Virus record (IMG/VR): IMGVR_UViG_3300037010_001702 | Coordinates: 175,442-239,441 of that record | Length of the DNA stretch: 64,000 nucleotides | Direction: 5' to 3' (one strand) | Shown: positions 15,927 to 60,742 of the stretch, in pieces | Position numbering within the stretch: position 1 is the first letter of the stretch | Layout: every line of letters starts with the position of its first letter | Made by a program: the position numbers and the translations under genes | Notes under the pieces: generated by a model | Databases searched by the model: none | Told to the model about the DNA's origin: nothing | What the model saw: only the letters and a program-made list of their open reading frames with translations

Positions 15927-15927
15927 T

Positions 15928-15979: not shown

Positions 15980-15980
15980 T

Positions 15981-41804: not shown

Positions 41805-42022
41805 TTGGGATTTTAATATTGAGCGCAGTTTGTCTTGCAATTTTAATTGCTATAAACTGGTATGCTGGGGATAATCTGACGGTCAGTGATTTCACTTTCT
41901 TAGTGTTTGTGTCATTAATCCCGCTCGTGAATGTTCTGACCGTTGCATTTTTCATATGGGCTATGATGACTGACAGCGGCATTAAATCGGAAGTTGTTAT
42001 GCTGAAAGGTCGTGGTGCATGA
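41801..42022 (+). CDS. Small membrane protein
   Basis: Two hydrophobic helices. Confidence 0.5.
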   Translation: MIGILILSAVCLAILIAINWYAGDNLTVSDFTFLVFVSLIPLVNVLTVAFFIWAMMTDSGIKSEVVMLKGRGA

Positions 42023-42172
42023 AAACATTGTTTGCTTGGACCGGTGCTGCACTCTATGTTCGGCCAAAACCAAAGTGCAGTGTTTGTGGTACTACAGAAA
42101 ATGTAAGATACGTGGGCGGGTACCAAGAGTACCTTTTCGATAGTCCGGGATGTATTCCCCTTTGAGGATATT

Positions 42173-42415
42173 ATGAATAAGAACATTGAAGCACTTGCAC
42201 TTGAAGCTGGGATGGTTAAAACCTCATTGCATTATGGTCGTAGAGATCCTTACGTGCTTTGGGAGGATGACATTGAAAAGTTTGCCGACTTGATTGTGGA
42301 GAAATGCTTAGATGCTTGTAGTCGGGCAAATGAGATTAGACATTTCGTGCCACCTACCCAGCAGCAAGTTGTCTTAAGTTGTATGGACGAGATTGAACGA
42401 ATTTTTAGGAGATAA
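42173..42415 (+). CDS. Hypothetical protein
   Basis: GAGGA RBS. Confidence 0.55.
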   Translation: MNKNIEALALEAGMVKTSLHYGRRDPYVLWEDDIEKFADLIVEKCLDACSRANEIRHFVPPTQQQVVLSCMDEIERIFRR

Positions 42416-43432
42416 ATGATGAATGAAACAATGATGTTTAAGGTTCTAGTTGGAAGTCGACTTTACGGAACACATACAGCAAAGTCTGACTTTGACTACA
42501 AGGTAGTTGTCTTGCCAAGCATGGATGATCTGCTAATGGGTAAAAAGCTTGCTAATCGTAAGGAGAAGCCAGAAGGTTCAAATGCGAATAGCAAGATGCA
42601 AGCTGGTGAAGCTGAAACAGAATACTTGCCGCTTCAAGTCTTCATGGATGATTTGTACAACGGCCAAACATACGCCCTCGAATTGATGTTCGCATTCAAT
42701 CAGGGGCTAGCAGAACGATGTAACGACCATGTTTTGAATAACAAGGTTACTGTCATGATGCGGGAACTTCAAGACAGGTTCTTGAATAGCACCATGAAGA
42801 AGATGGTGGGATACGCAGTTGCACAATCTCAGTTGTACGGTCTGAAGACAGAACGTTTCACAACCTTGAAGAAGGTTGTTGAGTTACTTACTGAGCACCT
42901 TGCCTTCTTTCCCGACCACACCACGATGGCTAATGAAGATGGACTACGCAATAAACTGCTACTACTTCCTCACGTAAAGCCGGTGATGATAGAGAATTCC
43001 GCTGGTGGATCAGCCCTTGCTCCAGCCTTGGACATAGTCGGAAAGAAGTTTCCGCTAACTAACAAGGTGCACACTTTGCTAGCATCTCTAAACGGATTGC
43101 TTGCTGGATACGGAGATCGCGTAGCATCATTTGAGGGAGAGGGTGTCGATTGGAAGGCATTGAGTCATGCAGTTCGGATAACGACTCAAGTGCTTGAACT
43201 TTCTAAGACAGGAAAGATGACATTCCCTAATGCACAAGCAGATATGCTGCGCGATATGAAGGAAGGAAAGATGACTCTTGAAGATGCAACTACATTGCTC
43301 GCGAATCATTTTAACCAGATAGATGCCGCAGTTGCTAACTCCACTTTGCCTTTGCGCAACCCAGTAATGGATGCAGATTTTGCAAAGTGGAAGCTAATGT
43401 GGCTACGTGCCTTCTACAGCGGGCAGCTTTAA
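42416..43432 (+). CDS. Pol-beta superfamily nucleotidyltransferase (NrdC.11/RlaP-like)
   Basis: VGSRLYGTHTAKSDFDYK, WKALSHAVR. Confidence 0.75.
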   Translation: MMNETMMFKVLVGSRLYGTHTAKSDFDYKVVVLPSMDDLLMGKKLANRKEKPEGSNANSKMQAGEAETEYLPLQVFMDDLYNGQTYALELMFAFNQGLAERCNDHVLNNKVTVMMRELQDRFLNSTMKKMVGYAVAQSQLYGLKTERFTTLKKVVELLTEHLAFFPDHTTMANEDGLRNKLLLLPHVKPVMIENSAGGSALAPALDIVGKKFPLTNKVHTLLASLNGLLAGYGDRVASFEGEGVDWKALSHAVRITTQVLELSKTGKMTFPNAQADMLRDMKEGKMTLEDATTLLANHFNQIDAAVANSTLPLRNPVMDADFAKWKLMWLRAFYSGQL

Positions 43433-43440
43433 ATCGGTAG

Positions 43441-43494
43441 ATAAGGGCTCGCCTTACCATACTTTATTGTAATGGTGGTAAGGCGAGCCCTTAT
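43441..43494. terminator. 20-bp hairpin between convergent genes
   Basis: ATAAGGGCTCGCCTTACCAT / GTGGTAAGGCGAGCCCTTAT. Confidence 0.6.
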
Positions 43495-43583
43495 AAACTT
43501 CTGGCTTTGATTTATTCGTTTTACCAAAGTATAACGTGCCAGTTAAAGCATGTCTTTTGATAAGAAAAGCGGGTTTAGCGCAC

Positions 43584-44021
43584 TTAGTAGTTTGGCGCAC
43601 GTTTAAGTTTCACTTCAATACCTTCAGGTATTGCCACAACGCGTCTCCGTCGTACCTTGGCTTTTTGCATGCCATCATACGAGAAGGCTTGTCCTACGAT
43701 GCGAGTAACGTAGGTGGTGTCAAATGTTCTGTATAGTGGTGCAAGCTGGGATGTAAGCCCGTGTTGTGCGATCTCTACACTTAGTGGGCTGCGTTCTGAT
43801 TTTCCGTAGAACCATTTAGTAACGATACTAAGAAATTCTTGGAGTGGAATATTTTCTTGGTCCGCATAATCTAACACATATGCCCCAATTTCTGCTGGAG
43901 TTATATTATCGATGATGGCTAAATACGTTTCTCGTTTGTATTCGAGCATACACATATATCCAAGATTAACCCGCTCTGATACGGGCTCAACAACTAATTT
44001 CGGTATTTTCTTTTTTGCCAT
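43584..44021 (-). CDS. Hypothetical protein
   Basis: Start re-assigned to MAKKKIPK with GGAG RBS. Confidence 0.65.
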   Translation of the reverse strand: MAKKKIPKLVVEPVSERVNLGYMCMLEYKRETYLAIIDNITPAEIGAYVLDYADQENIPLQEFLSIVTKWFYGKSERSPLSVEIAQHGLTSQLAPLYRTFDTTYVTRIVGQAFSYDGMQKAKVRRRRVVAIPEGIEVKLKRAPNY

Positions 44022-44257
44022 TTGCCATTCTCCATAATGCATGGGGCATTTTACTTCGGTCTGCACCCTCAACCATTCTTAAGTGACAGATGAAATGCTC
44101 ATGCGCTGTTAATTTTATCATTTCACTTCCCACCAAAGAGTCTGGGATGATGTGATGTCTTTTGTCATGCCCTTCAACACCGGCATTGTTGTTTTCAATA
44201 ATTTGGTAACACTAAGCAAGTGTATTTGATCTTGTAGGAACATAGTGTCCATTTCAT
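43987..44257 (-). pseudogene. HNH homing endonuclease remnant
   Basis: Minus strand RHHIIPDSLVGS...LTAHEHFICHL, with upstream stop/frameshift. Confidence 0.7.
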
Positions 44258-44419
44258 AGATTGAAACTATTTAAACTAATCTTGAACCTGTAACAAAAAT
44301 GTCAATAGTTACACGAAAACAACCTCATTTTGGTTACTTTGTTACTAACAAACTGTGTACATTTCCCCAGGTTAGGGTATAATTACTTTATCGAGTGATT
44401 AACTTAGAAAGTTTCCCAA

Positions 44420-44737
44420 ATGACTGCAATGGCCCTCTCCTCTTTGATTTCTTCTGCTGCTGAACTCTCCATTGACCAACAATTGGAATTGAATCGGGCT
44501 TTAGTTCAAATGATCAAGAACAAGCGTCGGGTTGCAGCAGTTGTTGTTGGTTCGAAGCTTCTCCCTGGTCAGCTTGTTACATTCAATGCCAAGACTCGCA
44601 GTCAGAAAATAATCAAGATCGAAAAGTTCAACCGGGCTGGTACTGCAGTTGTCGGTCGCGAACACAATGCAAAGGGTGAACAAACTTCCACAATGCGCTG
44701 GACTGTTCCTGTGACTCTTTGCACAGTTATTTCCTAA
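44420..44737 (+). CDS. Hypothetical early protein
   Basis: Early promoter 44355-83. Confidence 0.6.
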   Translation: MTAMALSSLISSAAELSIDQQLELNRALVQMIKNKRRVAAVVVGSKLLPGQLVTFNAKTRSQKIIKIEKFNRAGTAVVGREHNAKGEQTSTMRWTVPVTLCTVIS

Positions 44738-44825
44738 TGTGTTACACTTTAACCTGTGAAAACTATGTACTTTTCACAGGTTGTATAGTATAATAATTTA
44801 TCAACGGAAAACAAAGGAATCTAAA

Positions 44826-45170
44826 ATGGCTAAAGTACCTTGCAACTCCTGGTCCATTCTCCCTGCTGGTTGCCTCTTCAATGACAAGACGAAGGTTACA
44901 ATGGAAGAAGTGATGAAGGAATGGGATTCTGGTACCATTGTGGTATGCAAGAAGCCCAATGGCCATTTTGGTTTCATTGCTGGTGGTTATGGTGATTATG
45001 CAAAGATTGGTTCCAGCCAAATGTGCCACCACGATCAAACTTGCGCAAAGCTAGGTTACTGGGAAATTGTTGCTCAAGTCAAGTACAAAAAGGTAGATGG
45101 TGTGACTGTCACGGAAGTTGAAGGTTCCATCGAAGGTGTTAAGAAGGCTACCATCCACGTCTTCAAGTAA
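44826..45170 (+). CDS. Hypothetical early protein
   Basis: Early promoter 44765-94, AAGGA RBS. Confidence 0.6.
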   Translation: MAKVPCNSWSILPAGCLFNDKTKVTMEEVMKEWDSGTIVVCKKPNGHFGFIAGGYGDYAKIGSSQMCHHDQTCAKLGYWEIVAQVKYKKVDGVTVTEVEGSIEGVKKATIHVFK

Positions 45171-45677
45171 GGATAGAAAAGTGTTTGCTATTTCTCTTTC
45201 CGGCCTGTTTATTACTGTTGCGAAGCTCATGTGTTTGATTGTCGTGGCAGCATTTAGCGCATTGACAGTTCTTTGGCCTGTAAGTAAACAGCCCATTTCG
45301 AAGACTCAGAAAGTCATTTTCGCCATTTTGAATGTTATCATGGCGCTGTTCTTGTTTGGTGCAATCAAGCTTACTGATTAAGGATTAAAAAATGATTGAT
45401 GCGAAAACAGCCCGCAATGTCTCAAGATGGTTATCTGCTAATCATGACAGATGTGTTGTTCGTTGAGAACACGGTTAGTACATTTGAAAGTGAATACCTT
45501 TATGATTATGCAGGTATTGCAACGCGTGTAATTGAAAAGAGCAAATAGATGCTGCTAGCCCAGCAAAAGAACCAACTGAAAAGAAATCAAAGCCAGTTTG
45601 CCTAGGAACAGTGGCCTAGTTTACTTTGTTCCTAGGTCAGGTTATAATACATTATCAAACGATTATTGAGGTTAAAG

Positions 45678-46193
45678 ATGAAAAGCGAAATCCTGCTCTC
45701 TAAAGAACTTCGTGCAAAGGTAGAAGCTAAGACGAAGGAATGTTTCAACACTGCTGAGAAGAAATTTAAAACCAAATTTGAGATGCCTGAGATTAGGTAT
45801 AATGTAAAGTCCACAACCGCTGGACTTGCATATCATCAAAAGTGGTTGATTCGCTACAACTTAATTCTCTTGGTTGAAAATGAGGAACACTTCCTCAAGC
45901 ACACTGTTCCCCACGAAGTCGCTCACTTGATTAATCGTCAGGTGAACAAGCCTGCAGATGGCAAGAAGAAGCTGATGCCTCATGGCAAAGAATGGAAAGA
46001 TATTATGGCACTGTTTGGAATTCCAGCAGATGTGAAACATACTTATGATTGCGCGTCAATTGACAGGACACCACGGTCAAAGCGCAAGACTACCGAATCC
46101 AAGGTTGCTCGTATCCTCAACCAAATCAAGAAGCTCAATGAAGAAGATAAGGCAATCCTTGCCGACCGTATTGAGAATGGCGATATCTATTAA
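45678..46193 (+). CDS. SprT-like metalloprotease
   Basis: TAGLA, TVPHEVAH, HGKEWK; early promoter 45619-48. Confidence 0.85.
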   Translation: MKSEILLSKELRAKVEAKTKECFNTAEKKFKTKFEMPEIRYNVKSTTAGLAYHQKWLIRYNLILLVENEEHFLKHTVPHEVAHLINRQVNKPADGKKKLMPHGKEWKDIMALFGIPADVKHTYDCASIDRTPRSKRKTTESKVARILNQIKKLNEEDKAILADRIENGDIY

Positions 46194-46210
46194 TTCACAG
46201 AAAGAAAAGC

Positions 46211-47515
46211 ATGTCTAATTTTGTTCAAGTAATCAAGGAATGCGAAGCTGCTAATGGTGCGGGCACCAAGAAGATTATTCAAGCAGCTCTTGCAAAGGCT
46301 GATGAAATTGCTCAACAGCTTATTATTTATGCATTATCGCCATACCAGGTTTTTGGTGTTCGCAAGTTTGATATGCCAAAGTCTGGACCGAAGGTTACTC
46401 CCAAAAATGCATATGAGGAATTTTTCTGTGTCCTTGAACGTTTGGTCTCTCATGATCTAACTGGCGATGCTGCTCGAAATGCGGTCACTGGTGCTCTTGG
46501 TGGCTTTACTCTTGAAGAGCAAGATTACATTGTTCGAGTCCTTGACAAGGATTTGAAAGCCGGTTTCTCCGCAGATACTTTCAACAAGATCTGGCCTAAC
46601 AACAAGATTCCTACGTTCGAGGTAATGCTTGCTGACAAATGTGAAAACACTGAAGACTTCGAAAAGTATGTCATCTTCCCCTGCCAAGCAGACTGGAAGT
46701 TCGATGGACAGCGCAATATTGCTATCCAGCGCGAAGGTCAACCAGCTGACAATCGTGCTCGCTCTGGCAAGGCTTCTGAACACCTGAACGGTTTATTCGA
46801 TGAAGACCTCGCAAAAATCCGTGAATACCTCGGCTATGACTTCATTTTGGACGGTGAAGCCTTTGCTTCTGACTTTACTGAAACAATCAATGCCAAGAAG
46901 GCTGGCAATGATACTGCAAAAGCTAACATGCGCATTCGTGCATTCTTCTTGATGCCTCTAACTGATTGGATTGCACAGAAGACTAATATCACTATGCGTC
47001 AAAATCGCAAGGCTCTCGGAGAAATTCTGAAGGCTTGTGACTGCAAGAAGATCACTCTCTCCGAAGGTCGTGAAGTTACCGACTACCACGACATGATGGA
47101 ATACTGCAACGAAGTGATCGACGTTCACAAGCAAGAAGGTCTGATCTTGAAGGATTGGGATTCTGAATACACTTGGGATCGTACCTTCGCGTGGACCAAG
47201 GTGAAGCGCTTCTACGACGTGGATGCGCGATTCATCTCCTTCTACCCAGGCCGTCCAAAGAGCCGCCTCGCTAACACTGTTGGCGGCGCAAACTGTGTTG
47301 CCTTCCTTGAAAATGGCGAACGCATTGAGTTCAAAGTTGGCTCTGGCTTCTCTGACAAGGACCGTGAAGACATGAAGACTAACCCTGACAAGTGGTTGAA
47401 GCTTACGCATGTCATCAAGTACCAAGAAGTATCCCGTTCAAAGGGTAAGGAAGTTGCGTCTCTTCGGTTCTGCACCTATGAACGTTCGCGTGACGACAAA
47501 ATGGTGGAGATTTAA
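46211..47515 (+). CDS. ATP-dependent DNA ligase
   Basis: DWKFDGQR (motif I), ILDGEA, EGLILKD, WTKVK, KVGSGFSD. Confidence 0.9.
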   Translation: MSNFVQVIKECEAANGAGTKKIIQAALAKADEIAQQLIIYALSPYQVFGVRKFDMPKSGPKVTPKNAYEEFFCVLERLVSHDLTGDAARNAVTGALGGFTLEEQDYIVRVLDKDLKAGFSADTFNKIWPNNKIPTFEVMLADKCENTEDFEKYVIFPCQADWKFDGQRNIAIQREGQPADNRARSGKASEHLNGLFDEDLAKIREYLGYDFILDGEAFASDFTETINAKKAGNDTAKANMRIRAFFLMPLTDWIAQKTNITMRQNRKALGEILKACDCKKITLSEGREVTDYHDMMEYCNEVIDVHKQEGLILKDWDSEYTWDRTFAWTKVKRFYDVDARFISFYPGRPKSRLANTVGGANCVAFLENGERIEFKVGSGFSDKDREDMKTNPDKWLKLTHVIKYQEVSRSKGKEVASLRFCTYERSRDDKMVEI

Positions 47516-50841: not shown

Positions 50842-51597
50842 ATGAAACAAGTCCTGACGGTTATTCCTGGCAGTATTGATACTCTTAGAAGAGTGCTGAT
50901 GATTCAGCAATGGTCTGAGCTTAGAAATACACTTGGACAGATTGGATTAGAGGTCATTGTCATTCCGTTTTCCGCAAATAGTGGCACAGCCTTTGATCTG
51001 CCCTTCAGTGAAAAAGCTTTCATATTCGGTAATGATGTCCTGATAGATAAAGTAAAGGAAGATCGCTTGGCAGCGTGGTTATCTGACCGCGGCTTTAACG
51101 CAATCCACCAGCAGAACGTAAAGGCTTCCAGCACGGCTATTATTATTGATGAACAGCAGGCATGGTGCAGCTTTGGATTTGATGGAAGCTTGCGCCGAGA
51201 TAACCAATTTGAGGACATCTTGATTAGCGCTGGAAAGGTATATCGACCGCTTGAGATGAGGATCGGATTAGCAAGTGATGGAATTTTAGCTAACGTCTTT
51301 TGCCCACTCACGGAGATGCGTGGCCTTCTATGGTATCCACCCGCCTTCACAGAACAGGCCCGGCACGAGATACGTGATTGGTATCCTGATGCTATTGAGA
51401 TTAGTAATGAGGACAAGATTGGAATGGCGTGTAGTTCAATCATTCATAATGACCACGTCATTATCCCTGATGGGCTAAGTATGGAGCTTTATGAAAGACT
51501 TGAAGGACTGAACTATCAGGTCATAAAGCAAGACCTGCACGCCTTCATTGACTTAGGATTGGGTTGCAAGTCTCTCATTATTCCAATCAATGAATAA
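50842..51597 (+). CDS. Amidinotransferase/DDAH (pentein)-fold protein, degenerate active site
   Basis: QQWSELRNTL, LLWYPPAF, MACSSI, C-terminal DLHAFIDLGLGCKSL in place of the DxSEFxKxGGxxxC pattern. Confidence 0.55.
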   Translation: MKQVLTVIPGSIDTLRRVLMIQQWSELRNTLGQIGLEVIVIPFSANSGTAFDLPFSEKAFIFGNDVLIDKVKEDRLAAWLSDRGFNAIHQQNVKASSTAIIIDEQQAWCSFGFDGSLRRDNQFEDILISAGKVYRPLEMRIGLASDGILANVFCPLTEMRGLLWYPPAFTEQARHEIRDWYPDAIEISNEDKIGMACSSIIHNDHVIIPDGLSMELYERLEGLNYQVIKQDLHAFIDLGLGCKSLIIPINE

Positions 51598-51627
51598 ATA
51601 AACAATATGATTTAAGGATGAGATATA

Positions 51628-51795
51628 ATGAAGCTACGAGAATTGTTCGAAGATATCGGCAAGAAGACTGAAGTTCAGCTCGAAAAAGGCCTGTCAAGGG
51701 ACGAGGCTTTAAAGTTAGCTCCGTGGAAGAAAAAGTACGGAGACTGCAGAGCATTCTTCTACAATCCTAAAACAGGAGTAGCGACATGGATATGA
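51628..51795 (+). CDS. 55-aa late protein with MKLRELFE leader (below the track cutoff)
   Basis: AATAAATA at 51593-600, AAGGA RBS, MKLRELFEDIGKK...TWI. Confidence 0.6.
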   Translation: MKLRELFEDIGKKTEVQLEKGLSRDEALKLAPWKKKYGDCRAFFYNPKTGVATWI

Positions 51796-52099
51796 GTGAA
51801 GATCAGAAACAAACACTTGAGACTATTGTTGAGGGTGGTGCAGAAGTAAGTACTGTTGCGTATAATCCTTCAAGCGTAACAGGCGACCCTGAGGGTGATG
51901 CTATCTCCACTGGATGGGTCCAGTACGCGAGACAAGCAAGCGCTTCGTTAGTTGAAGTAGTCTACACAAGATAAGGGTAAGAATTGGTGGATTGGTGGAA
52001 TGAATAACTTTTTGCTAAATAAAGAAGATGCAGAAAATAGAGGATTGAAATGAGGACGGATAAATTGTTCATTTTCAAAAACAGCGTAAACTTAGATTA

Positions 52100-52430
52100 G
52101 GAAATGATTGTGACACCCGGGGGCAGTGCCCGGCAGGTCCACCAAAAGAACTCTAAATCTTACAGAAATGTTTGAACAGGTTTGGTATCCCAGATCCCTC
52201 TTGCATAGGTAAAACTGATAACAAAGACAGATATGCCAAGAGTTCTTTTAATGGGCTTGACACAGGATCGACCACGAAAAAAGTATTTGTTTGAGCGCTC
52301 GTCAGGCGATCGACGTTAAAGAAGCAAAACTATAAACGCAAACGACAAATTTGTGATGGCTGCCTAATTGGCTTGCCGGAGTTTTTGAGGGTTTATCTTA
52401 GCAACAGAATTAAACCCTCACCTTCATTTC
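52100..52430 (+). ncRNA. ssrA: Circularly permuted (two-piece) tmRNA gene
   Basis: T-arm CCGGG-GGCAGTG-CCCGG and 3' acceptor strand CAGGTCC-ACCA end at 52144. The 5' acceptor strand GGGCTTG starts downstream at 52253 and gives a G3:U70 pair; D-loop ends GGATCGAC. Tag frame GCA AAC GAC AAA TTT GTG ATG GCT GCC TAA at 52338-67. Outer ends approximate. Confidence 0.88.
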
Positions 52431-52446
52431 GCAAAGGATAAGAATA

Positions 52447-52731
52447 ATGGATATGGGCGAAATTTCACAGCTGGAGCTGGATTTACTTTTGCTGTTCTAC
52501 ACATACTCTAATCAGTTTGGAACTGTTGATATTGACTTCTGTGCCAAGTTCGCCGCCGATAAAATGGGTGTCTTCATTTTGAAGCAGCCCTTCCAATTTA
52601 CTCAAGAGCACCTTGACTGTCTTATGGACAACGGATTAGTTCCGGACACACGCGAACTTCTAACTGTCATCCCACTTAACAGACCAAAGATAAAAGCGAG
52701 AAGAGTTAGAAAGCCCAAGGAATCTGGTTAA
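52447..52731 (+). CDS. Hypothetical protein
   Basis: AAGGA RBS. Confidence 0.55.
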   Translation: MDMGEISQLELDLLLLFYTYSNQFGTVDIDFCAKFAADKMGVFILKQPFQFTQEHLDCLMDNGLVPDTRELLTVIPLNRPKIKARRVRKPKESG

Positions 52732-52746
52732 GCGCAAATAAATAAA

Positions 52747-53007
52747 ATGCACCGCACATATATGTTGAGGTGTAAAATGAATAAGATTATTCCAATACCA
52801 AAGAAAATGTTCATAGGCGTCTTGGCAAGCGCCTTTGTAGTGGGTACAGCTTTACCCAACTTTCTCAATGCTGAACAAACTCCAGTAGCCCAGCCCCACA
52901 AGATAGTTCTTCATCCCCGCGGCCAAAAGAAAGCTTCATCACCTCAAGTAGAAGCTTTAGTATCCCAATTCATCAACCTAATCCCTGGTTCAAGATTACA
53001 TAACTGA
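52747..53007 (+). CDS. Hypothetical membrane-anchored protein
   Basis: Hydrophobic segment FIGVLASAFVVG; true start may be the later ATG (MNKIIP). Confidence 0.4.
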   Translation: MHRTYMLRCKMNKIIPIPKKMFIGVLASAFVVGTALPNFLNAEQTPVAQPHKIVLHPRGQKKASSPQVEALVSQFINLIPGSRLHN

Positions 53008-53302
53008 GCGTAAAGGGTAAAATGTCTAATAGACATTATGCAAGCATCTGCAGTTGAAAATGAGATAATTCAGATGTGTTGCAACACGAAACGGATTAGC
53101 TCCGATCTTGTTGATTTCATCAACATACAAGACTTTTGGGGGGCAAGCACGATGTGTTTAAGTTGTCAGTGCAGCATCTCTTCCAACATTCATGGGCCAA
53201 CTGGCAGCAAGAAGCAGAAGTCACGCTGTTAGATGATGACGTGATAAATGAAAACTTTGAATGGCCTGATCTCCAGGCCAAGGGCAGAATAATTAACATA
53301 AT

Positions 53303-53647
53303 ATGGCATATCAATTCCAACGGATGACTCAGAACGTTCTTCCACTCGCGAAGATACCAAAACCGGACACCAACTATCAGAGCTGGGAAATTGAATCAAT
53401 CCTTGAGATACTCCTGGAGAAAGCTGTTGAAACCGGTGAGATTCACAGTCAGATGTTCTTCGAGCATAAAGGACAATATGCTCCACAAGCTCATAGAGCA
53501 ACTACAATGTACAGGGCAATCGAGATTATTCGACAGCTTCAGTACGAGGTTGCTCGTTTAACAGACGAGCTTGCTGACGCAGATGCGGAAAAGAAACCTT
53601 CTAAGCGCAGGTCGAAGAAAGCAGGCAATCCTAAGGTCGAAGACTGA
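53303..53647 (+). CDS. Hypothetical protein
   Basis: 114 aa ORF with coiled-coil/basic tail. Confidence 0.5.
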   Translation: MAYQFQRMTQNVLPLAKIPKPDTNYQSWEIESILEILLEKAVETGEIHSQMFFEHKGQYAPQAHRATTMYRAIEIIRQLQYEVARLTDELADADAEKKPSKRRSKKAGNPKVED

Positions 53648-53710: not shown

Positions 53711-54283
53711 ATGAAGAAAATCATTTTAGCATCCATCCTCGCTCTTGCAGCAGGCGCAGCATCCGCTCAAGTTTCAGCCGTAGCCTCATATGAAGCAAAC
53801 GTTGTTGCGAACTCCGCAGTTAACACACAAGAAGTTTTGGCCGGTGTAAATGTCGGTCTTGGTAATGGATTCGCAGCCCAGGCACTTGGCATTGGTGATT
53901 ACAACCGTGGTGAAGGCGTTTCTGCTTCCACTGGAACAGGTTGGTTGATTGGCGGAACAAAGACATTTAGTGCAATTTACGGTGTTACTCCAACTATCGG
54001 TCTTGGCTACGGTCATACTCGAGTTGACACAGGTACCCAGTTGAACTTTATCCAAGCAACTGCTGAAGGTCGTTACCCTATTGCTCAAGGTACAAACTTG
54101 GTTGTTGGTTATCGCTTCCGTCAAGGTGAGTTTGTTGAAGACTACTTCCGCTCTAACCGCGTTTCAGTTGGTGTTGAAAAGCAGCTTTCAAAGGCACTTG
54201 TTCTTGGAGTACAAGCTCAGCACACTGCTGGTGAAGGTTACATTTCTAATGGCGTAGGTGCTTCAGTCGCTTACACGTTCTAA
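53711..54283 (+). CDS. Outer-membrane beta-barrel protein with signal peptide
   Basis: MKKIILASILALAAGAASA signal peptide, alternating beta strands, C-terminal GVGASVAYTF; late promoter CATAAATA near 53658. Confidence 0.75.
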   Translation: MKKIILASILALAAGAASAQVSAVASYEANVVANSAVNTQEVLAGVNVGLGNGFAAQALGIGDYNRGEGVSASTGTGWLIGGTKTFSAIYGVTPTIGLGYGHTRVDTGTQLNFIQATAEGRYPIAQGTNLVVGYRFRQGEFVEDYFRSNRVSVGVEKQLSKALVLGVQAQHTAGEGYISNGVGASVAYTF

Positions 54284-54904: not shown

Positions 54905-57565
54905 ATGTTTTTCGATTCAATACAGATTGCTGAAGGTGGCGCAATTTCTAACATGGTTGTGGCATCTGGGACTTCATTCCCAGCACAAGCTAATCCTGGT
55001 GAGCTGTTCTTTCATACCAGTGACAACAAGATGTACCTTTACAACGGTGCTTCTTGGGTATCAATGGCTGACACATCTAGCGTAGTTACATCGGTTGCAA
55101 GCCGCACGGGAGCTATAACACTAATGACCACCGACATTGGTGGTTTAGCTACTGTTGCTTCCTCAGGTTCATATGATGACCTGACAAACAAGCCAACTAT
55201 TCCAGTTGTCACTGGAACAAACACCGGCGACCAAACAATCACCCTTACTGGTGATGTAACGGGATCGGGCACTGGTTCATTCTCAGCAACTCTTGCCACG
55301 GTAAATGGGGCACCAGTTTCAGCTGCATTCCAAAAGATTACAGTAAATGGTAAGGGCCTTGTAACAGCAACTTCAGCTGTCACTCCTACAGACATTACAA
55401 CAGCTCTTGGATACACTCCAGCTAGCCTTAGCGGAGCAACCTTTACTGGCTCTGTTCTTCTTTCAGCAGACCCTACTCAAGCTCTCGGTGCTGTTACAAA
55501 GCAGTATGTTGATAACGTAGCTTCAGGTCTTAACGTCCACAATGCTGTAGTAACAGCCACAACTGCAGCTCTTACTGCAACCTACTCAAATGGCACAGAT
55601 GGTGTTGGTGCTACTCTTACGGGCACAGCGAATGGTTCACTTGGTTCTGTTGGAGGCTATACCCCAGCCAATGGGGATCGCATCATCATTAAGGATCAAG
55701 TTAATGCAGCCCAAAACGGTATCTACGTAGTTACATCAACTGGTTCAGCTGGTTCTCAATACGTACTTACTCGTGCTACAGACTTTGATAATTCTCCAGT
55801 AGGTGAAATTGTTGGTGGTGCTTTTGCTTACGTTCAAAATGGTTCTCTTGCTGGCACCCAGCTTGTAGTTACAACCCCAACAGCTATTACAGTTGGAACA
55901 ACTGGTATTACGTTCTCACAACTTTCCGGTAGTACAACTCTTACAGCTGGTTCTGGTATCTCAATTTCTGGCACAACAATTTCCAACTCTGGTGTTATTA
56001 CCGTAGCTGGCCGAAGCGGTGCTGTTGCTCTTTCAACATCAGACATTTCTGGTCTTGCAGTAGTTGCTTCAACTGGTTCCTACTCAAGCTTGATTGGTAC
56101 TCCATCACTCGCAACAGTAGCAACCTCTGGTTCCTACAATGATCTTTCAAACAAGCCTACCTCATTTGCAAACATTACTGGTGGTGCTTCTGGTTCTATT
56201 CCTTATCAAACAAATTCAAGCACAACGGCACTGCTTGCTAAGGGAACTGACGGACAAGTTCTTACACTTGCTTCGGGTTTACCAGCTTGGTCTACGCTTA
56301 CCACCTCGGGTTCAGCACTCACTGGAACATCTCTTGCTTCCAACATCGTAACATCCAGCTTGACTTCTGTTGGTACGCTTACCAGCTTGACAGTTACTAA
56401 TCCTATTATTGGCTCGGTAACAGGAAATGCTGCAACTGCTACTTCAGCAACAACCGCTACTAACCTTGGTGGTGGAAGCGCTTATGCTGTTCCATATCAA
56501 TCAACAGCTGGTACTACTTTGTTCTTGCCGGCTGGTACTTCAGGTCAAGTTCTTTCAACACAGGGAACTGGCTCTGCTCCTATCTGGACAAGTGCTCAGA
56601 ACCTTATCTCCTACCCAGCAAATCAAATCGTTTATGGTACTGGAACTGGTTCTTCATCTTACTCGTCGCTTACATACAATCCACTTACTAACGTGCTTAC
56701 TGTTGGCGGGGCTGGTACAGCGCTTATGCAGGCAGGAGCAAGTCAGTCCATTGAACTTCTATCTGATACGTCAATTATCCTCACTGTTGGGTCAACCGAC
56801 TTCCTTGTCGTTGATACAGTTGGTACCTTCAAGGTAAATGGTTCAAAGGGAACAGCTGGACAAGTTCTCACGTCAAATGGTTCTGCTGCAGCAGCTTCAT
56901 GGTCAAGTTTCAGCGCTTCATCATTGAGCGGAACATCTCTTCCAGCTACAATCGTTTCCTCAAGCTTGACTTCAGTTGGAACTCTTGGTAACCTCACTGT
57001 AACGGGTACTATCTCTGGTTCTATCTCTGGAAATGCAGCGACTGCAACTCTTGCTACTACAGCAACTAACATTGCTGGTGGTGCTGCTGGTTCTATTGCT
57101 TATCAGACATCCTCTGGTGCAACAACTATGTTGGCTAAAGGAACTGATGGACAAGTTCTTACCCTCGCTGGTGGAGTACCTACCTGGGCTTCTGGCGGCT
57201 CTGGTGGTATTTCAGCTTCATCAAACAATACATTCACCGCTGCACAACGCGGTGCTGTATCGGTTCTTACTGCTGGTTCAACAGTAACACCTAACTTTGA
57301 TGCATCAAATAACTTCTCCCTTACAGCAACATCAAGCTTCACTCTTGCTAATCCAACAGGTACAATTACTCCAGGTCAATCTGGTATTATTGCTATCTCT
57401 CAAGATGCTTCTGGTGGTAGAGTAATTACTTGGGGTTCATACTGGAAGGGTGCAGGTGGCGTTAAGCCCACTCTTTCAACAAGCTCTAATGCGGTTGATT
57501 TAATCTCCTACTACGTTGTTTCAGCAACGTCAATCTTCGTGTCTGCTAACTTGGCAATTGCTTAA
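54905..57565 (+). CDS. Tail fibre protein
   Basis: G/T/S/A-rich; GAVTKQYVDN, NGDRIIIKDQ...QNGIYVV, GQVLT repeats; late promoter CATAAATA near 54855. Confidence 0.8.
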   Translation: MFFDSIQIAEGGAISNMVVASGTSFPAQANPGELFFHTSDNKMYLYNGASWVSMADTSSVVTSVASRTGAITLMTTDIGGLATVASSGSYDDLTNKPTIPVVTGTNTGDQTITLTGDVTGSGTGSFSATLATVNGAPVSAAFQKITVNGKGLVTATSAVTPTDITTALGYTPASLSGATFTGSVLLSADPTQALGAVTKQYVDNVASGLNVHNAVVTATTAALTATYSNGTDGVGATLTGTANGSLGSVGGYTPANGDRIIIKDQVNAAQNGIYVVTSTGSAGSQYVLTRATDFDNSPVGEIVGGAFAYVQNGSLAGTQLVVTTPTAITVGTTGITFSQLSGSTTLTAGSGISISGTTISNSGVITVAGRSGAVALSTSDISGLAVVASTGSYSSLIGTPSLATVATSGSYNDLSNKPTSFANITGGASGSIPYQTNSSTTALLAKGTDGQVLTLASGLPAWSTLTTSGSALTGTSLASNIVTSSLTSVGTLTSLTVTNPIIGSVTGNAATATSATTATNLGGGSAYAVPYQSTAGTTLFLPAGTSGQVLSTQGTGSAPIWTSAQNLISYPANQIVYGTGTGSSSYSSLTYNPLTNVLTVGGAGTALMQAGASQSIELLSDTSIILTVGSTDFLVVDTVGTFKVNGSKGTAGQVLTSNGSAAAASWSSFSASSLSGTSLPATIVSSSLTSVGTLGNLTVTGTISGSISGNAATATLATTATNIAGGAAGSIAYQTSSGATTMLAKGTDGQVLTLAGGVPTWASGGSGGISASSNNTFTAAQRGAVSVLTAGSTVTPNFDASNNFSLTATSSFTLANPTGTITPGQSGIIAISQDASGGRVITWGSYWKGAGGVKPTLSTSSNAVDLISYYVVSATSIFVSANLAIA

Positions 57566-57576
57566 GGACTAACAGA

Positions 57577-58524
57577 ATGCCATCCATTTTTTCTGGCAAC
57601 ATGACTCTGCAGAACATAATCGTTGGCGTCAAGCCATTTGTTCCTGTAGCGTCATTCACATCAACACACACTGGGTCAAACTCAACGTTTAGCTTTTCTG
57701 ATACCTCAGTGAACTATCCAACGAGCTGGTACTGGGATTTTGGGGATGGTACATCATCAACCCTTCAAAGTCCTACGCACACCTTCACGTACAATGGTAG
57801 CTACACTGTCACTCTTACAGCAGCTAATGGAACTGGAAGTAACAGTACTTCCAACGTTATTTCAGTTTCAGATGGCGCTGACCCGTACTTTGGTGACGTT
57901 GGTCTTCTTATTAACGGTGATCAAAGCCCAGTTATTGACATTAAGGGCAACGCTCTTAATGTTCTTGGTGTTGGTAGCACTCCAGTTACCCCATCGCAGG
58001 ATACTGGAAACTATGTTTATGGTAGCGGAAGCGTTTACTTCAATGGTGGCAATGGTTTCAAGATTGCTTACAACTCATCATTTAACCTAAGTGGCGTGGA
58101 TTGGACTCTTGAAACATGGTTTAACGCCGACGCATTTGGCGGTACTATTCTGTCAAAGGATACCCATGGTACTAACTACGACTGGTGCATTGCACTTACG
58201 AATTCTACCCATATTACCATCACCACTGCCGCAACATCCAATTCATTGTCAGCTACTGTGCCAACAATGTCGGCAGGAACCTGGTATCACGTTGCTATCG
58301 TTCGTTACAATGGCGTTGTAACGATCTACCTAAATGGTACAGCGTATGCTTCTAAGACAATGGACGTAACTAATGCTGACGTTGCATGGTTCACCGTTGG
58401 TTGTGCTGGATGGAATAGTCCTAACACGTACTATACTGGTCACGTTGATGATTTGAGAATTACACAGGGCATCGCCCGCTACACTGGTAACTTCACTCCA
58501 ACTGGTCCTGCACCTACTCACTAA
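57577..58524 (+). CDS. PKD + LamG/concanavalin-like domain virion protein (adhesin)
   Basis: WYWDFGDGTSSTLQSPTHTF (PKD), DWTLETWF, WYHVAIVR, GHVDDLRIT. Confidence 0.8.
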   Translation: MPSIFSGNMTLQNIIVGVKPFVPVASFTSTHTGSNSTFSFSDTSVNYPTSWYWDFGDGTSSTLQSPTHTFTYNGSYTVTLTAANGTGSNSTSNVISVSDGADPYFGDVGLLINGDQSPVIDIKGNALNVLGVGSTPVTPSQDTGNYVYGSGSVYFNGGNGFKIAYNSSFNLSGVDWTLETWFNADAFGGTILSKDTHGTNYDWCIALTNSTHITITTAATSNSLSATVPTMSAGTWYHVAIVRYNGVVTIYLNGTAYASKTMDVTNADVAWFTVGCAGWNSPNTYYTGHVDDLRITQGIARYTGNFTPTGPAPTH

Positions 58525-58589
58525 TACCGTGAGCTGTTTCCAATGCTCATAATCGAATAAATAAGTTGTAAAGTTTTAAGGAACACAAA

Positions 58590-60638
58590 ATGATACCTGG
58601 TGGAATAGTCGCAACGCTTCTTCGTGCTGTAAGCAATACTACCGCCGTGGCGGACGCCGTATTTGCATATGTAAGCCTGTTACTTAATGGTGAAACCTCA
58701 TCTGGCACAAACAACAACACCTTTACCGATAGTAGCACTAATGCTATCGCTCTTACTCGTGGCGGCACCCCTACTCAAGGCATCTTTACTCCATTCAGCC
58801 AGACTGGCTGGAGTGGCAAGTTCAATGGATCTTCTGACTACGTTCAAGTTGCTGGCGACACCATCATGAATTTTGGTTCTAGTAATTGGACGTGCGAAGC
58901 TTGGGTTAATCTTAGCGCTATGCCAACATCGGATGCATGGCCTGGCTCTTACTCTCAGCTTATGGTTGTTGTTGGAACCGGTACGTTAAATTTAGGTGAT
59001 GGATGTGACATGCTCATTGGCGCTACTAAGCTAATGATTCAATCAAATGATACGGCATATGTTTCTAATGCAGTTCACAATATGGTGACAGGTGTTTGGT
59101 ACCACCTAGCATACGTTCGTAACGGTAATACTATCTACTTTTACATTAATGGTGTGTTGAATGGAACTGTTGCTTTCAGTGGGTCAGTTGGAACTGGAGC
59201 CAATACTTGGATCGGTTGTGAAACATCCCAGGGTGCTTTCTTCAACGGCTATATCTCTAACGTGCGCGTTGTAAATGGAACGGCTGTTTACACTGGTAAC
59301 TTTACACCATCTACCTCGCCACTCACAAATATAACGAACACAAAACTGCTTACGCTTCAAAATAGCAGATTTTTAGATAACTCTAGCAGCCCAGTATCCT
59401 TTACGTTTGGTGGTGCACCATCTATTCAAGCTGTATCACCATGGGAACCTACCACGGCATGGTCATCCTCAATCAATGGTACTTCAATGTACTTCAACGG
59501 CACGACTGACTATTTGTCAAGTGCATCTGGAAATGCGAACCTTAAATTTGCTGGCAACTTTACGCTTGAGTTCTGGGCATATCCAACTGTTGCGAATGCA
59601 TACAATGAAGTTTTTGATACACGTATTGGTGGCTCATCAACAACAGGCTTAATCTTCTACATCAATAGTTCAAAACAACCTGCCCTTTACACAGGTGGTG
59701 CAGCCCTGCTTACTTCAAGTGTTGCAGTTGCTCTAAACTCTTGGAACCACATTGCATATGTTCGTAATGGAACAACAATAACCATTTACGTAAATGGTGT
59801 TTCAGGTGGAACGGTAACTAACTCTACCAACTTCAGCGATGGTAACGTATCTATTGGTAAAACAAATGAATCTGCTGCTAACTTCTATGCTGGATATATT
59901 TCGGATCTTCGCGTTAATAACAGCACAGCTATCTACACAACCACATTTACGCCGCCCACAGCTCCATTGACAGCATCTGCTGGAACATCTCTTTTAGTTA
60001 CTGGTAATGGTGCTGCTGTTATTGACTATGCCGCCAAGAATGATGTCATCACTCTTGGCGCTGTTACAACCCAAACATCTACAGTAAAATTTGGAACTAA
60101 TGCTCTTCGCTTCCCTGGAACTGCAGCTGATTATATCTCAATGCCTATCAGCAATGGTCTAGCTCTTGGAACGGGGGACTTTACAGTTGAATGCTGGTTT
60201 AACCAGACCGCTAAGACAGCTACTCAACCAGCAATTTTCTCTAACTACAACTCATACACCACCGGTGGTCTTTCATTATTTGCTGGTCATTCATCGGGTT
60301 CTACAACACAGTTTCAGGTCGGTTCGCAAGGTACTACATTCCCAGTTATTCAAAGCACCACAGCAATTACCCCAGGCACCTGGCAACACCTTTGCGTGAT
60401 GCGCACTGGTACTACTCTTCGCCTATTCGTAAATGGTGTACCAAATGGTACAGCCACAATTACTGCAACAACGGCTTACAATGGAGTAGGTACTAACTTT
60501 TTAGTTGGTAACTCAGGAGACAATCTAGCTAATGGTTTCTTAAATGGTTATATTGACGACTTCCGCGTAACTAAAGGCGTAGCTCGTTACGCTACTGGCG
60601 GATTTACTCCACCATCAGCTGGTTTTTACACTCACTAA
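58590..60638 (+). CDS. Triple LamG/concanavalin-like domain virion protein
   Basis: Three repeats of xFTxExW...WxHxAxVR...GYIxxxR; late promoter AATAAATA near 58556. Confidence 0.8.
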   Translation: MIPGGIVATLLRAVSNTTAVADAVFAYVSLLLNGETSSGTNNNTFTDSSTNAIALTRGGTPTQGIFTPFSQTGWSGKFNGSSDYVQVAGDTIMNFGSSNWTCEAWVNLSAMPTSDAWPGSYSQLMVVVGTGTLNLGDGCDMLIGATKLMIQSNDTAYVSNAVHNMVTGVWYHLAYVRNGNTIYFYINGVLNGTVAFSGSVGTGANTWIGCETSQGAFFNGYISNVRVVNGTAVYTGNFTPSTSPLTNITNTKLLTLQNSRFLDNSSSPVSFTFGGAPSIQAVSPWEPTTAWSSSINGTSMYFNGTTDYLSSASGNANLKFAGNFTLEFWAYPTVANAYNEVFDTRIGGSSTTGLIFYINSSKQPALYTGGAALLTSSVAVALNSWNHIAYVRNGTTITIYVNGVSGGTVTNSTNFSDGNVSIGKTNESAANFYAGYISDLRVNNSTAIYTTTFTPPTAPLTASAGTSLLVTGNGAAVIDYAAKNDVITLGAVTTQTSTVKFGTNALRFPGTAADYISMPISNGLALGTGDFTVECWFNQTAKTATQPAIFSNYNSYTTGGLSLFAGHSSGSTTQFQVGSQGTTFPVIQSTTAITPGTWQHLCVMRTGTTLRLFVNGVPNGTATITATTAYNGVGTNFLVGNSGDNLANGFLNGYIDDFRVTKGVARYATGGFTPPSAGFYTH

Positions 60639-60642
60639 CTTA

Positions 60643-60670
60643 GAAAAGGGAGCCTAGGCTCCCTTTTCTA
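60643..60670 (+). terminator. Rho-independent terminator
   Basis: AGAAAAGGGAGCCTAGGCTCCCTTTTCT. Confidence 0.7.
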
Positions 60671-60742
60671 ATTTCCGCACCATAACTGGACGTATCAATA
60701 AATACCTGTAGAGATAACATCCAGTCTGGAGATTTAAGAACT

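What the first reader, a model, noticed from the sequence alone, without database searches (positions are those of the whole stretch)
52100..52430. Phage-encoded circularly permuted two-piece tmRNA with its own tag (ANDKFVMAA)
The 3' tRNA-like half (T-arm, CAGGTCC-A-CCA, ending 52144) lies upstream of the 5' half (GGGCTTG from 52253). The stems pair 7/7 with the G3:U70 alanylation determinant. CACGA (after GGATCGAC) pairs with TTGTG before the T-arm. A pk1-like CGCT/GGCG + CGTC/GACG pseudoknot precedes the resume codon, and the tag ends in AA (ClpXP-type). The non-canonical GGCAGTG T-loop and the permutation resemble alphaproteobacterial tmRNA as I recall it, hinting at host or donor. Phage tmRNAs I know of are one-piece, and standard pipelines often miss permuted genes. 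The variant tag could redirect rescue or degradation during infection.
Basis: partly seen in the sequence, partly recalled or inferred. Interest (0 to 1): 0.85.

Follow-up and report, generated by a model that had tools for sequence, protein, structure and literature searches.

The report
Two-piece tmRNA gene in jumbo phage
The sequence really is a circularly permuted (two-piece) tmRNA gene carried by a large uncultured phage, but phage-borne two-piece tmRNAs are already documented and this one has over a hundred relatives in viral metagenomes, so it is a new member of a known kind.

Summary
ARAGORN calls a permuted tmRNA at 52051-52458 with tag ANDKFVMAA. Rfam gives tmRNA_permuted 100.5 bits (E 2e-18) and alpha_tmRNA 89.8 bits (E 5e-23).

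The gene lies in a 470-nt gap with no long ORF, inside phage DNA (RNR, UvsX, ligase, tail and baseplate genes, all on the + strand). The window is 100% identical to pieces of a 239-kb and an 87-kb IMG/VR contig.

The acceptor stem with G3:U70, A73-CCA, the T-arm, P2a, P2d and one PK1 stem all hold. The stems that vary show compensatory changes across 73 distinct relatives.

The novelty claim fails. Buchholz 2022 (PMC9004378) reported 53 two-piece tmRNAs among phage genomes. I found at least 120 IMG/VR contigs carrying the same family.

An alphaproteobacterial origin is only half supported. The T-loop is alpha-like, but the PK1 hairpin and the short tag look beta-like.

No smpB lies in the window. 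The most likely function is ribosome rescue and tagging using host SmpB, AlaRS and RNase P.

Verdict: new member of a known kind, low to moderate interest.

The parts
52034..52430 (+). Whole permuted tmRNA (ssrA) gene: acceptor piece, spacer, coding piece
   Evidence: Rfam alpha_tmRNA spans 52034-52418 and tmRNA_permuted spans 52083-52367. ARAGORN spans 52051-52458. No ORF of 70 aa or more overlaps 51975-52446.
52083..52144 (+). Acceptor piece, the 3' tRNA-like half. Its 5' end is inferred, not mapped.
   Evidence: Start of the RF04321 match. It ends in the encoded CCA at 52142-52144.
52083..52087 (+). P2d 5' strand AGCGU, pairing with GCGCU 52295-52299
   Evidence: Rfam consensus structure. 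Five different complementary sequence variants occur among relatives.
52108..52112 (+). P2a 5' strand UUGUG, pairing with CACGA 52273-52277
   Evidence: 71-73 of 73 distinct relatives keep each pair, with changes on both sides at all five positions.
52117..52133 (+). T-arm: stem CCGGG/CCCGG and 7-nt loop GGCAGUG (52122-52128)
   Evidence: Rfam alignment. The stem is canonical in 73/73 relatives, with compensatory changes at three pairs. The MFE fold recovers it.
52134..52144 (+). Acceptor-stem 3' strand CAGGUCC, discriminator A73 and CCA
   Evidence: The pairs are canonical in 73/73 relatives and G3:U70 is invariant.
52145..52252 (+). 108-nt intervening spacer, presumed to be excised. Its ends form an 11-bp stem (52144-52154 with 52239-52249) stacked on the acceptor stem.
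   Evidence: MFE fold, z = -3.25 with 0 of 200 shuffles as good. 77 of 80 distinct family spacers close the same way, and lengths range from 27 to 382 nt.
52253..52259 (+). Acceptor-stem 5' strand GGGCUUG, the inferred RNase P cleavage product 5' end
   Evidence: The U5:G68 wobble is unique to this phage (72 of 73 have C:G).
52260..52272 (+). D-loop analogue ACACAGGAUCGAC
   Evidence: Matches the Rfam consensus. Positions 52260-52271 lie inside the search pattern used to collect the relatives (two of them, the K and W positions, degenerate), so their constancy says nothing; the last base (C 52272) varies in the family.
52273..52299 (+). 3' strands of the P2 helices (CACGA 52273-52277 through GCGCU 52295-52299)
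52300..52315 (+). PK1-position hairpin: CGUC (52300-52303), loop AGGCGAUC, GACG (52312-52315)
   Evidence: Helix in RF04321 and in beta_tmRNA. Four complementary variants occur in the short-PK1 subfamily: CGUC/GACG, CGGU/ACCG, CACC/GGUG and CGAU/AUCG. No conserved second pseudoknot stem was found.
52338..52367 (+). Tag reading frame: resume codon GCA (52338-52340), ANDKFVMAA, stop TAA (52365-52367)
   Evidence: ARAGORN, sequence, and the context UAUAAAC-GCA-AAC-GAC matching the Rfam consensus.
52358..52377 (+). Small hairpin with the stop codon in its loop (helix-5-like)
   Evidence: MFE folds only. Inferred.
52387..52430 (+). 3' terminal hairpin GAGGGUUUA/UAAACCCUC with loop containing GCAACAGAA, then a U-rich tail. 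Probable 3' end or weak terminator of the coding piece.
   Evidence: The loop motif matches the alpha_tmRNA consensus GGCAACAGAA. Relatives have clear hairpin-plus-U-run terminators at the same place. The generic terminator scan did not flag it.

Best explanation
This is a genuine, intact ssrA gene of the circularly permuted type, carried by an uncultured jumbo phage with a genome of at least 239 kb.

Proposed mechanism (inferred unless stated):
1. One precursor of about 350-400 nt is transcribed in the same direction as all flanking genes.
2. In the precursor, the T-arm and the 7-bp acceptor stem form across a 108-nt spacer. The ends of that spacer zip into an 11-bp stem (shown by folding and by conservation in relatives).
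3. Host tRNA-processing enzymes remove the spacer. RNase P cuts 5' of G52253, and 3' trimming stops at the encoded CCA at 52144.
4. This leaves an acceptor piece of about 62 nt and a coding piece of about 175 nt, held together by the acceptor stem and the P2 helices (helices shown by covariation).
5. Host AlaRS charges the RNA through G3:U70 and A73. Host SmpB and EF-Tu deliver it to ribosomes stalled on broken mRNAs.
6. Translation resumes at GCA 52338 and appends ANDKFVMAA. The hydrophobic C-terminus ending in AA sends the product to ClpXP-type proteases.

The likely benefit to the phage is to keep ribosomes free and recycle amino acids while host mRNA is degraded. A second possibility is to back up the host tmRNA.
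For: - ARAGORN calls a permuted tmRNA with this tag.
- Rfam RF04321 scores 100.5 bits and RF01849 scores 89.8 bits.
- In 73 distinct relatives the acceptor stem stays canonical (its sequences were fixed by the collection patterns, so this is weak evidence), while the T stem and P2a are canonical with compensatory changes, which is not constrained that way.
- P2d and the PK1 hairpin each occur in four or five complementary variants.
- The precursor fold has z = -3.25, and the spacer closes in 77 of 80 relatives.
- Tag frames are intact across the family: all 113 tags parsed start AN or AAN, and 105 end in AA (the parser itself required a GCN-AAY start and a final A).
- Phage context is clear. 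RNR, UvsX, ligase, a CCA-adding enzyme and tail and baseplate genes flank the gene on both sides.
- The same sequence occurs at 100% identity in two IMG/VR contigs.
- Relatives sit inside phage tRNA arrays.
- Literature: the permuted transcript is cut by tRNA-processing enzymes into two base-paired pieces (PMC11915505). Phage two-piece tmRNAs are known (PMC9004378). Huge phages carry tmRNA and SmpB (PMC7162821).
Against: - There are no expression, processing, charging or tagging data.
- No smpB was found in the 64 kb, so activity depends on compatibility with an unknown host's SmpB.
- No sigma-70 promoter or canonical terminator was detected on the + strand.
- A full pseudoknot 1 could not be demonstrated; only a hairpin is supported.
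- The CM scores are less than half those of cellular alpha tmRNAs (200-229 bits), so the RNA is divergent.
- A second wobble pair, U5:G68, lies near G3:U70 and is unique to this phage.
Confidence: 0.8

Rival explanations
1. The RNA acts as a decoy or inhibitor. It titrates host SmpB or AlaRS and shuts down host trans-translation rather than performing it, as was reported for the tRNA-like-domain-only molecule of mycobacteriophage DS6A.
For: TLD-only phage tmRNA-like molecules inhibit tmRNA (PMC4131195; PMC11915505). No smpB is present in the window. The pseudoknot is reduced and the CM scores are low.
Against: A complete mRNA-like domain is present, with the resume-codon context and an intact tag frame. 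Related phages keep degron-like tags of the form AND...AA despite sequence divergence, which implies the frame is translated.
Confidence: 0.08
2. The gene is a replacement that counters defence or damage. The phage copy substitutes for a host tmRNA or CCA ends that are cleaved during infection, either by host defence nucleases or by the phage's own host shut-off. It would work together with the phage CCA-adding enzyme and the other RNA-repair-like genes nearby. The molecular mechanism is the same as in the best explanation; only the selective reason differs.
For: The same window holds a tRNA nucleotidyltransferase at 40704-41804 (PHROG E 5e-94) and an RlaP-like nucleotidyltransferase at 42416-43432. 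The latter is a weak match (Pfam E 1.3e-06, 28.7 bits). Relatives place the tmRNA gene within tRNA arrays.
Against: The link is purely contextual. The repair-like genes lie about 5-12 kb away and are common in large phages. No known defence system is shown to target tmRNA here.
Confidence: 0.15
3. The gene is a decaying, non-functional copy captured from a bacterium.
For: It scores 89.8 bits against alpha_tmRNA, versus 200-229 bits for cellular genes with the same T-arm. The second PK1 stem is absent.
Against: All identity elements are intact. Every helix is maintained by compensatory change across a large viral family, and there is no frame disruption. This is purifying selection, not decay.
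Confidence: 0.05
4. The sequence is host DNA: an assembly chimera, a prophage flank, or an attP-type fragment of the host ssrA.
For: tmRNA genes are frequent integration sites, and phages often carry 3' fragments of them (PMC4383910 abstract; PMC9004378).
Against: The gene is full length, not a 3' fragment. Phage genes on the same strand flank it on both sides for tens of kb. The sequence is identical in two contigs from different IMG datasets. No bacterial genome among 185,579 species has more than the shared 26-nt T-arm, and those that do have different bodies and tags.
Confidence: 0.02

Closest known systems
Two-piece tmRNAs of marine phages (Methylophilales phage Melnitz, pelagimyophages such as Mosig, some cyanophages; Buchholz et al. 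2022, PMC9004378)
   Same: Phage-encoded, circularly permuted ssrA found by ARAGORN. Carried by large aquatic myovirus-type phages, with alpha-like features regardless of host. No phage smpB was reported for them, and none was found here.
   Different: There is no BLASTN similarity between this gene and any of 50,697 GenBank phage records. I did not confirm that Melnitz itself is in that set. No glutamine riboswitch follows the gene here. The downstream ORFs are unannotated and are not a recognisable late-transcription coactivator.
IMG/VR family of permuted tmRNAs sharing GGGCYUGACACAGKWUCGA and T-loop GGCAGUG
   Same: Same acceptor stem, T-loop, D-loop analogue, P2 architecture and spacer-closing stem. 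Tags are of the ANDxxFxxAA type.
   Different: This phage has a 9-residue tag (one residue shorter), a U5:G68 wobble, its own P2a sequence and the short hairpin form of PK1. Apart from L003 and L006, which are the same phage, the nearest relatives are only about 70-80% identical. It is not embedded in a tRNA array.
Cellular alphaproteobacterial two-piece tmRNA (Rfam RF01849; Caulobacter crescentus prototype, Keiler, Shapiro & Williams 2000, from my own knowledge; Micavibrio-like MAGs L010-L017)
   Same: Permuted order and the non-canonical T-loop. The 26-nt T-arm plus acceptor strand is identical to Micavibrio-like MAGs, and the 5' strand is nearly identical (GGGCCUGAAACAGGAUCGAC). The spacer has a closing stem and the 3' hairpin carries the GCAACAGAA loop motif.
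   Different: Cellular genes score 200-229 bits against 89.8 here. Cellular tags are 13-21 residues (ANDNY...AA) against 9. The cellular PK1 region differs, and their spacers are shorter (about 30-75 nt by eye).
Betaproteobacterial two-piece tmRNA (Rfam RF01850)
   Same: The PK1 hairpin CGUCAGGCGAUCGACG closely matches the beta consensus CGucAGgcgAcggaCG. The consensus frame in that alignment reads as a 10-residue ANDE...AA tag (my reading), similar in length and type. Several family members score best with this model, up to 150.9 bits.
   Different: The beta consensus T-loop is the canonical UUCGAUU, not GGCAGUG. For this gene alpha_tmRNA outranks beta_tmRNA.
One-piece phage tmRNAs (mycobacteriophage Bxz1 group, Bacillus phage G; PMC4131195) and the TLD-only RNA of phage DS6A
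   Same: Phage-borne components of the trans-translation system.
   Different: Those genes are in standard order, or lack a tag frame in the case of DS6A. This one is permuted and has a complete tag frame.

Membership tests
tmRNA, permuted (two-piece) form | Covariance-model score above the curated threshold | tested here: met
   RF04321 scores 100.5 bits (gathering 47) and RF01849 scores 89.8 bits (gathering 50). ARAGORN calls tmRNA*.
tmRNA, permuted (two-piece) form | Gene order permuted: T-arm and acceptor 3' strand with CCA lie upstream of the acceptor 5' strand and coding region, separated by a spacer | tested here: met
   CCA ends at 52144, G1 is at 52253, and the spacer is 108 nt.
tmRNA, permuted (two-piece) form | 7-bp acceptor stem with the G3:U70 alanine identity pair, A73 discriminator and CCA | tested here: met
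   GGGCUUG pairs with CAGGUCC 7/7, followed by ACCA. The stem is canonical in 73/73 relatives, but both strands lay inside the patterns used to collect them, so this constancy is largely by construction.
tmRNA, permuted (two-piece) form | T-arm (5 bp plus 7-nt loop) and D-loop analogue GGAUCGA | tested here: met
   The T stem shows compensatory changes.
tmRNA, permuted (two-piece) form | P2 helices joining the 5' part of the acceptor piece to the coding piece | tested here: met
   P2a keeps 71-73 of 73 canonical pairs with changes on both sides. P2d occurs in five complementary variants.
tmRNA, permuted (two-piece) form | Pseudoknot 1 upstream of the resume codon | tested here: inconclusive
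One stem (CGUC/GACG) is supported by four covarying variants.
tmRNA, permuted (two-piece) form | Tag frame starting at an Ala resume codon and ending in a hydrophobic ...AA degron plus a stop codon | tested here: met
   GCA at 52338 through TAA at 52367 reads ANDKFVMAA. Relatives keep AND...AA tags.
tmRNA, permuted (two-piece) form | Processing into two RNAs, alanylation, SmpB binding and tagging activity | not testable with these tools
   This needs RNA-end mapping and biochemistry.
tmRNA-SmpB system encoded as a pair | A cognate smpB gene in the same genome | tested here: not met
   phmmer --max with E. coli SmpB against all six-frame ORFs of 50 aa or more in the window gave a best E of 1.5. 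Only 64 kb of a genome of at least 239 kb could be searched.
alpha_tmRNA (RF01849) as a lineage, meaning an alphaproteobacterial origin | Alpha-type T-loop, 3' hairpin loop, PK1 and tag, with a score comparable to cellular members | tested here: inconclusive
   The T-loop and the GCAACAGAA loop are alpha-like, and the exact 26-mer occurs only in Micavibrio-like MAGs. The score is 89.8 bits against 200-229, the PK1 hairpin and tag are beta-like, and relatives flip between the two models.
Melnitz-type ssrA plus glutamine riboswitch module | glnA-type riboswitch at the 3' end of ssrA | tested here: not met
   No Rfam hit other than tmRNA in 51000-53500 at E of 1 or less.

The most novel reading that the evidence does not exclude
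The gene may be one tip of a large lineage of two-piece tmRNAs that is propagated by phages. The lineage has at least 120 IMG/VR contigs and no BLASTN match for the two members tested among 50,697 GenBank phage records. It combines an alpha-type tRNA-like domain with a beta-type mRNA-like domain and, in this branch, reduces pseudoknot 1 to a hairpin. On this reading the lineage has evolved and spread among jumbo phages largely independently of any host ssrA, possibly across bacterial classes, and tunes its tag to host proteases. That would make it a viral tmRNA clade in its own right and not a set of repeated host captures.
Probability: 0.25. Interest if true: 0.5.

Novelty: new member of a known kind. 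Interest (0 to 1): 0.25.

Why it matters
As an individual gene it adds one more tmRNA to the growing list of translation-related genes in large phages. It does not change the picture, because two-piece tmRNAs in aquatic phages were described in 2022 and standard tools recognise this one.

Three points have modest value:
1. The family it belongs to is abundant in viral metagenomes, yet the two members tested by BLASTN (this gene and L035) have no match in GenBank phages. ARAGORN calls only about a quarter of its members, so phage tmRNA counts based on ARAGORN are underestimates.
2. The mosaic of alpha-like and beta-like features warns against using a phage tmRNA subtype to infer host or donor.
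3. The short hairpin in place of pseudoknot 1, and the 9-residue tag, are natural minimal variants that could inform what trans-translation strictly requires.

Tried and rejected
- BLASTN and megablast of the gene, of 20 kb around it, and of a main-family relative against 50,697 GenBank phages gave no real match. The only hits had E of 0.02-3 and fell in unrelated genes.
- A glutamine riboswitch as in Melnitz is absent.
- The sigma-70 promoter and terminator scan found nothing on the + strand near the gene. A GATAAAT box at 52057-52063 resembles -10-like boxes upstream of relatives, but this is only an impression.
- smpB was searched with E. coli SmpB fetched from NC_000913 and was not found in the window or next to the cellular relatives.
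- Neighbouring ORFs (50842-51597, 51786-51974, 52447-52731, 52747-53007, 53303-53647, 53711-54283) have no PHROG or Pfam match. They therefore give no functional link and no gp33-like coactivator.
In L002, L004, L046 and L130 the loop GGCG is kept while the upstream strand changes to AACA or AGCA. In L001 CGCU is kept while the loop becomes GGAG.
- I looked by eye for a canonical second PK1 stem between the hairpin loop and the stretch before the resume codon. Nothing is conserved; GAU/AUC in some relatives is lost here.
- RNAcofold MFE of the two pieces does not reproduce the comparative P2 structure, so I relied on covariation instead.
- A donor phylogeny was not attempted.
- Keiler 2000 and Sharkady & Williams 2004 are not held in the paper library. 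What I say about them is from memory.
- Searches failed on a coordinate slip and were repeated.

Full report
**1. The observation**

- T-stem CCGGG/CCCGG lies at 52117-52121 and 52129-52133, with a 7-nt loop GGCAGTG.
- The acceptor 3' strand CAGGTCC lies at 52134-52140 and is followed by A and CCA, ending at 52144.
- 108 nt further on is GGGCTTG (52253-52259). It pairs with the 3' strand at all seven positions: five Watson-Crick pairs, G3:U70 and U5:G68.
- Next comes ACACAGGATCGAC, then CACGA (52273-52277), which pairs with TTGTG (52108-52112).
- The frame GCA AAC GAC AAA TTT GTG ATG GCT GCC TAA (52338-52367) reads ANDKFVMAA.

ARAGORN calls one RNA gene in the whole 64 kb, a permuted tmRNA at 52051-52458 with exactly that tag. 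Rfam gives tmRNA_permuted RF04321 at 100.5 bits (gathering 47, E 2.2e-18) over 52083-52367. It gives alpha_tmRNA RF01849 at 89.8 bits (gathering 50, E 4.9e-23) over 52034-52418.

**2. Context**

All sizeable ORFs are on the + strand. They include the following:
- ribonucleotide reductase large and small subunits
- a UvsX/RecA-like recombinase
- an ATP-dependent ligase
- a tRNA nucleotidyltransferase
- phage tail-repeat, tail-fibre and baseplate-wedge proteins

The tmRNA gene fills a 470-nt gap between small ORFs (51786-51974 and 52447-52731). No ORF of 70 aa or more overlaps this gap on either strand.

The window is 100% identical over 6.7 kb and 3.7 kb to loci from IMG/VR contigs of 239,441 bp and 86,692 bp. 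The source is therefore an uncultured jumbo phage. Its RecA-like protein is closest (44% identity) to that of Ralstonia jumbo phage RsoM2USA, followed by Rak2/121Q-like phages. There is no nucleotide-level relative in 50,697 GenBank phage records.

**3. Relatives and comparative support for the structure**

The exact 29-nt T-arm plus acceptor strand occurs in 9 IMG/VR contigs. In 119 of 123 occurrences an acceptor 3' strand with CCA lies upstream, so the genes are permuted.

Across 73 distinct sequences:
- The acceptor stem is canonical in 73/73 and G3:U70 never varies. Both strands of that stem lay inside the patterns used to collect these relatives, so this constancy is largely by construction.
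- The T-stem is canonical in 73/73, with changes on both sides at three pairs.
- P2a is canonical in 71-73 of 73, with changes on both sides at all five pairs.

In the 18 sequences that share the window's short PK1 region:
- P2d (AGCGU 52083-52087 with GCGCU 52295-52299) appears in five different complementary versions.
- The hairpin CGUC/GACG (52300-52303 with 52312-52315) appears in four.

The spacer varies from 27 to 382 nt (median 90). In 77 of 80 distinct spacers the two ends pair with each other. In the window this is an 11-bp stem stacked on the acceptor stem. The fold of 52114-52262 has z = -3.25, and none of 200 shuffles folds as well. This is the precursor geometry expected for excision of the spacer by tRNA-processing enzymes. 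PMC11915505 gives that as the general mechanism for permuted tmRNA genes.

**4. What is not upheld**

CGCU is the 3' strand of P2d. Relatives that keep the loop GGCG have AACA or AGCA upstream, and L001 keeps CGCU but has GGAG in the loop. I could not find any conserved second stem. In this branch the PK1 position may hold only a hairpin. From memory, PK1 of E. coli tmRNA can be replaced by a stable hairpin.

**5. Mechanism**

Shown:
- the helices
- the identity elements
- the intact tag frame and its conservation as an AND...AA degron-like peptide in relatives

Inferred from established tmRNA biology:
- transcription as one precursor
- RNase P cleavage 5' of G52253 and 3' trimming to the CCA at 52144
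- association of the two pieces through the acceptor stem and P2
- charging by host AlaRS and delivery by host SmpB and EF-Tu
- resumption of translation at GCA 52338
- targeting of tagged products to ClpXP-type proteases

No smpB was detected in the window, so host SmpB is assumed. Huge phages are reported to carry tmRNA and sometimes SmpB (PMC7162821).

The purpose is not known. The usual proposals are to sustain the ribosome pool and recycle amino acids during host shut-off (PMC9004378). A back-up role against RNA damage is conceivable, given the CCA-adding enzyme and other RNA-repair-like genes 5-12 kb upstream.

**6. Comparison with what is known**

Phage-encoded two-piece tmRNAs are already in the literature. 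Buchholz et al. 2022 describe one in phage Melnitz. They found that 53 of 133 unique tmRNAs in 18,146 phage genomes are two-piece, and that 50 of those come from aquatic phages. The tmRNA database lists 79 phage sequences and supplied the RF04321 model that hits this gene.

This gene lacks the glutamine riboswitch of Melnitz. Neither it nor the one main-family member tested has a BLASTN match in GenBank phages.

The tag is not exotic. It is one residue shorter than family tags such as ANDEKFLMAA and ANDSKFALAA, and the ...MAA ending recurs in the family.

**7. Alpha or beta?**

Alpha-like features:
- The T-loop GGCAGUG and the 3' hairpin loop GCAACAGAA match the alpha consensus.
- Among 185,579 species genomes, the 26-nt T-arm plus acceptor strand occurs exactly only in eight MAGs. 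Five are labelled Micavibrio, two as uncultured or unclassified Alphaproteobacteria, and two only as Pseudomonadota.
- The tmRNAs of those MAGs score 200-229 bits with alpha_tmRNA, apart from one cut by a contig end (158.7 bits). They carry 13-21-residue tags.

Beta-like features:
- The PK1 hairpin and the neighbouring sequence match the beta_tmRNA consensus. That consensus has a canonical UUCGAUU T-loop and a frame I read as a 10-residue ANDE...AA tag.

Family members with the same tRNA-like domain flip between beta (up to 150.9 bits) and alpha (52-90 bits) as best model. The subtype therefore says little about donor or host, and both remain unresolved.

**8. A side result on tools**

ARAGORN called a tmRNA in only 21 of 87 related viral loci. 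RF04321 hit all 27 loci tested.

**9. Verdict**

This is a real, intact, permuted tmRNA gene in a jumbo phage. It is a divergent new member of a known kind. Interest is low to moderate at 0.25.

The most novel reading still open is that the abundant IMG/VR family is a phage-propagated tmRNA lineage of mosaic origin, and not a series of host captures (probability about 0.25).

Noticed in passing
window 14274-17818: The ribonucleotide reductase large subunit is in pieces. The first piece is 14274-15926 (ATP-cone through barrel positions 1-213). A GIY-YIG endonuclease ORF follows at 15930-16736. The last piece, 16730-17818, has a weak intein-splicing motif followed by barrel positions 212-522. 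This looks like an nrdA interrupted by a mobile element with a homing endonuclease.
   Followed up: partly
window 9721-12500: A UvsW-like helicase is split over three ORFs. The first, 9721-10779, carries UvsW_N, ResIII and the N-terminal part of a Hint/intein domain. The second, 10757-11674, is a TnsA-like endonuclease. The third, 11643-12500, carries the intein C-terminal splicing motif and Helicase_C. This looks like an intein with an embedded endonuclease, read across frame changes.
   Followed up: partly
window 40704-47515: Genes that look like RNA or DNA repair lie 5-12 kb upstream of the tmRNA gene. They are a tRNA nucleotidyltransferase (CCA-adding; 40704-41804, PHROG E 5e-94), an RlaP-like nucleotidyltransferase (42416-43432), a SprT-like protein (45666-46193) and an ATP-dependent ligase (46211-47515).
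   Followed up: no
window 1-64000: There is no tRNA gene anywhere in the 64 kb despite the CCA-adding enzyme and the tmRNA. Several relatives have their tmRNA inside arrays of 9-36 tRNAs (L026, L036, L038, L071, L086, L089).
   Followed up: no
L092 6007-6081: A related viral contig carries a tRNA with a CUA anticodon, which ARAGORN labels tRNA-Pyl. This is a possible amber suppressor. It lies about 250 nt downstream of its family tmRNA 5' motif.
   Followed up: no
L040, L058, L069, L081, L125 (spacers): Some relatives have spacers of 339-382 nt between the CCA end and the 5' end of the coding piece, far longer than the median of 90 nt. What these spacers contain was not examined.
   Followed up: no
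L010-L017: Alphaproteobacterial MAGs, five of them labelled Micavibrio, have long tags with a duplicated ANDN motif, for example ANDNFVVANDNNQAVAIAA.
   Followed up: no
window 20045-23635 and 54905-63469: Very large tail-fibre or baseplate-like proteins are present. They carry phage tail repeats, Laminin_G_3/PKD domains and a Peptidase_S74 chaperone domain. This is consistent with a jumbo myovirus related to Rak2/RsoM2USA-type phages.
   Followed up: partly
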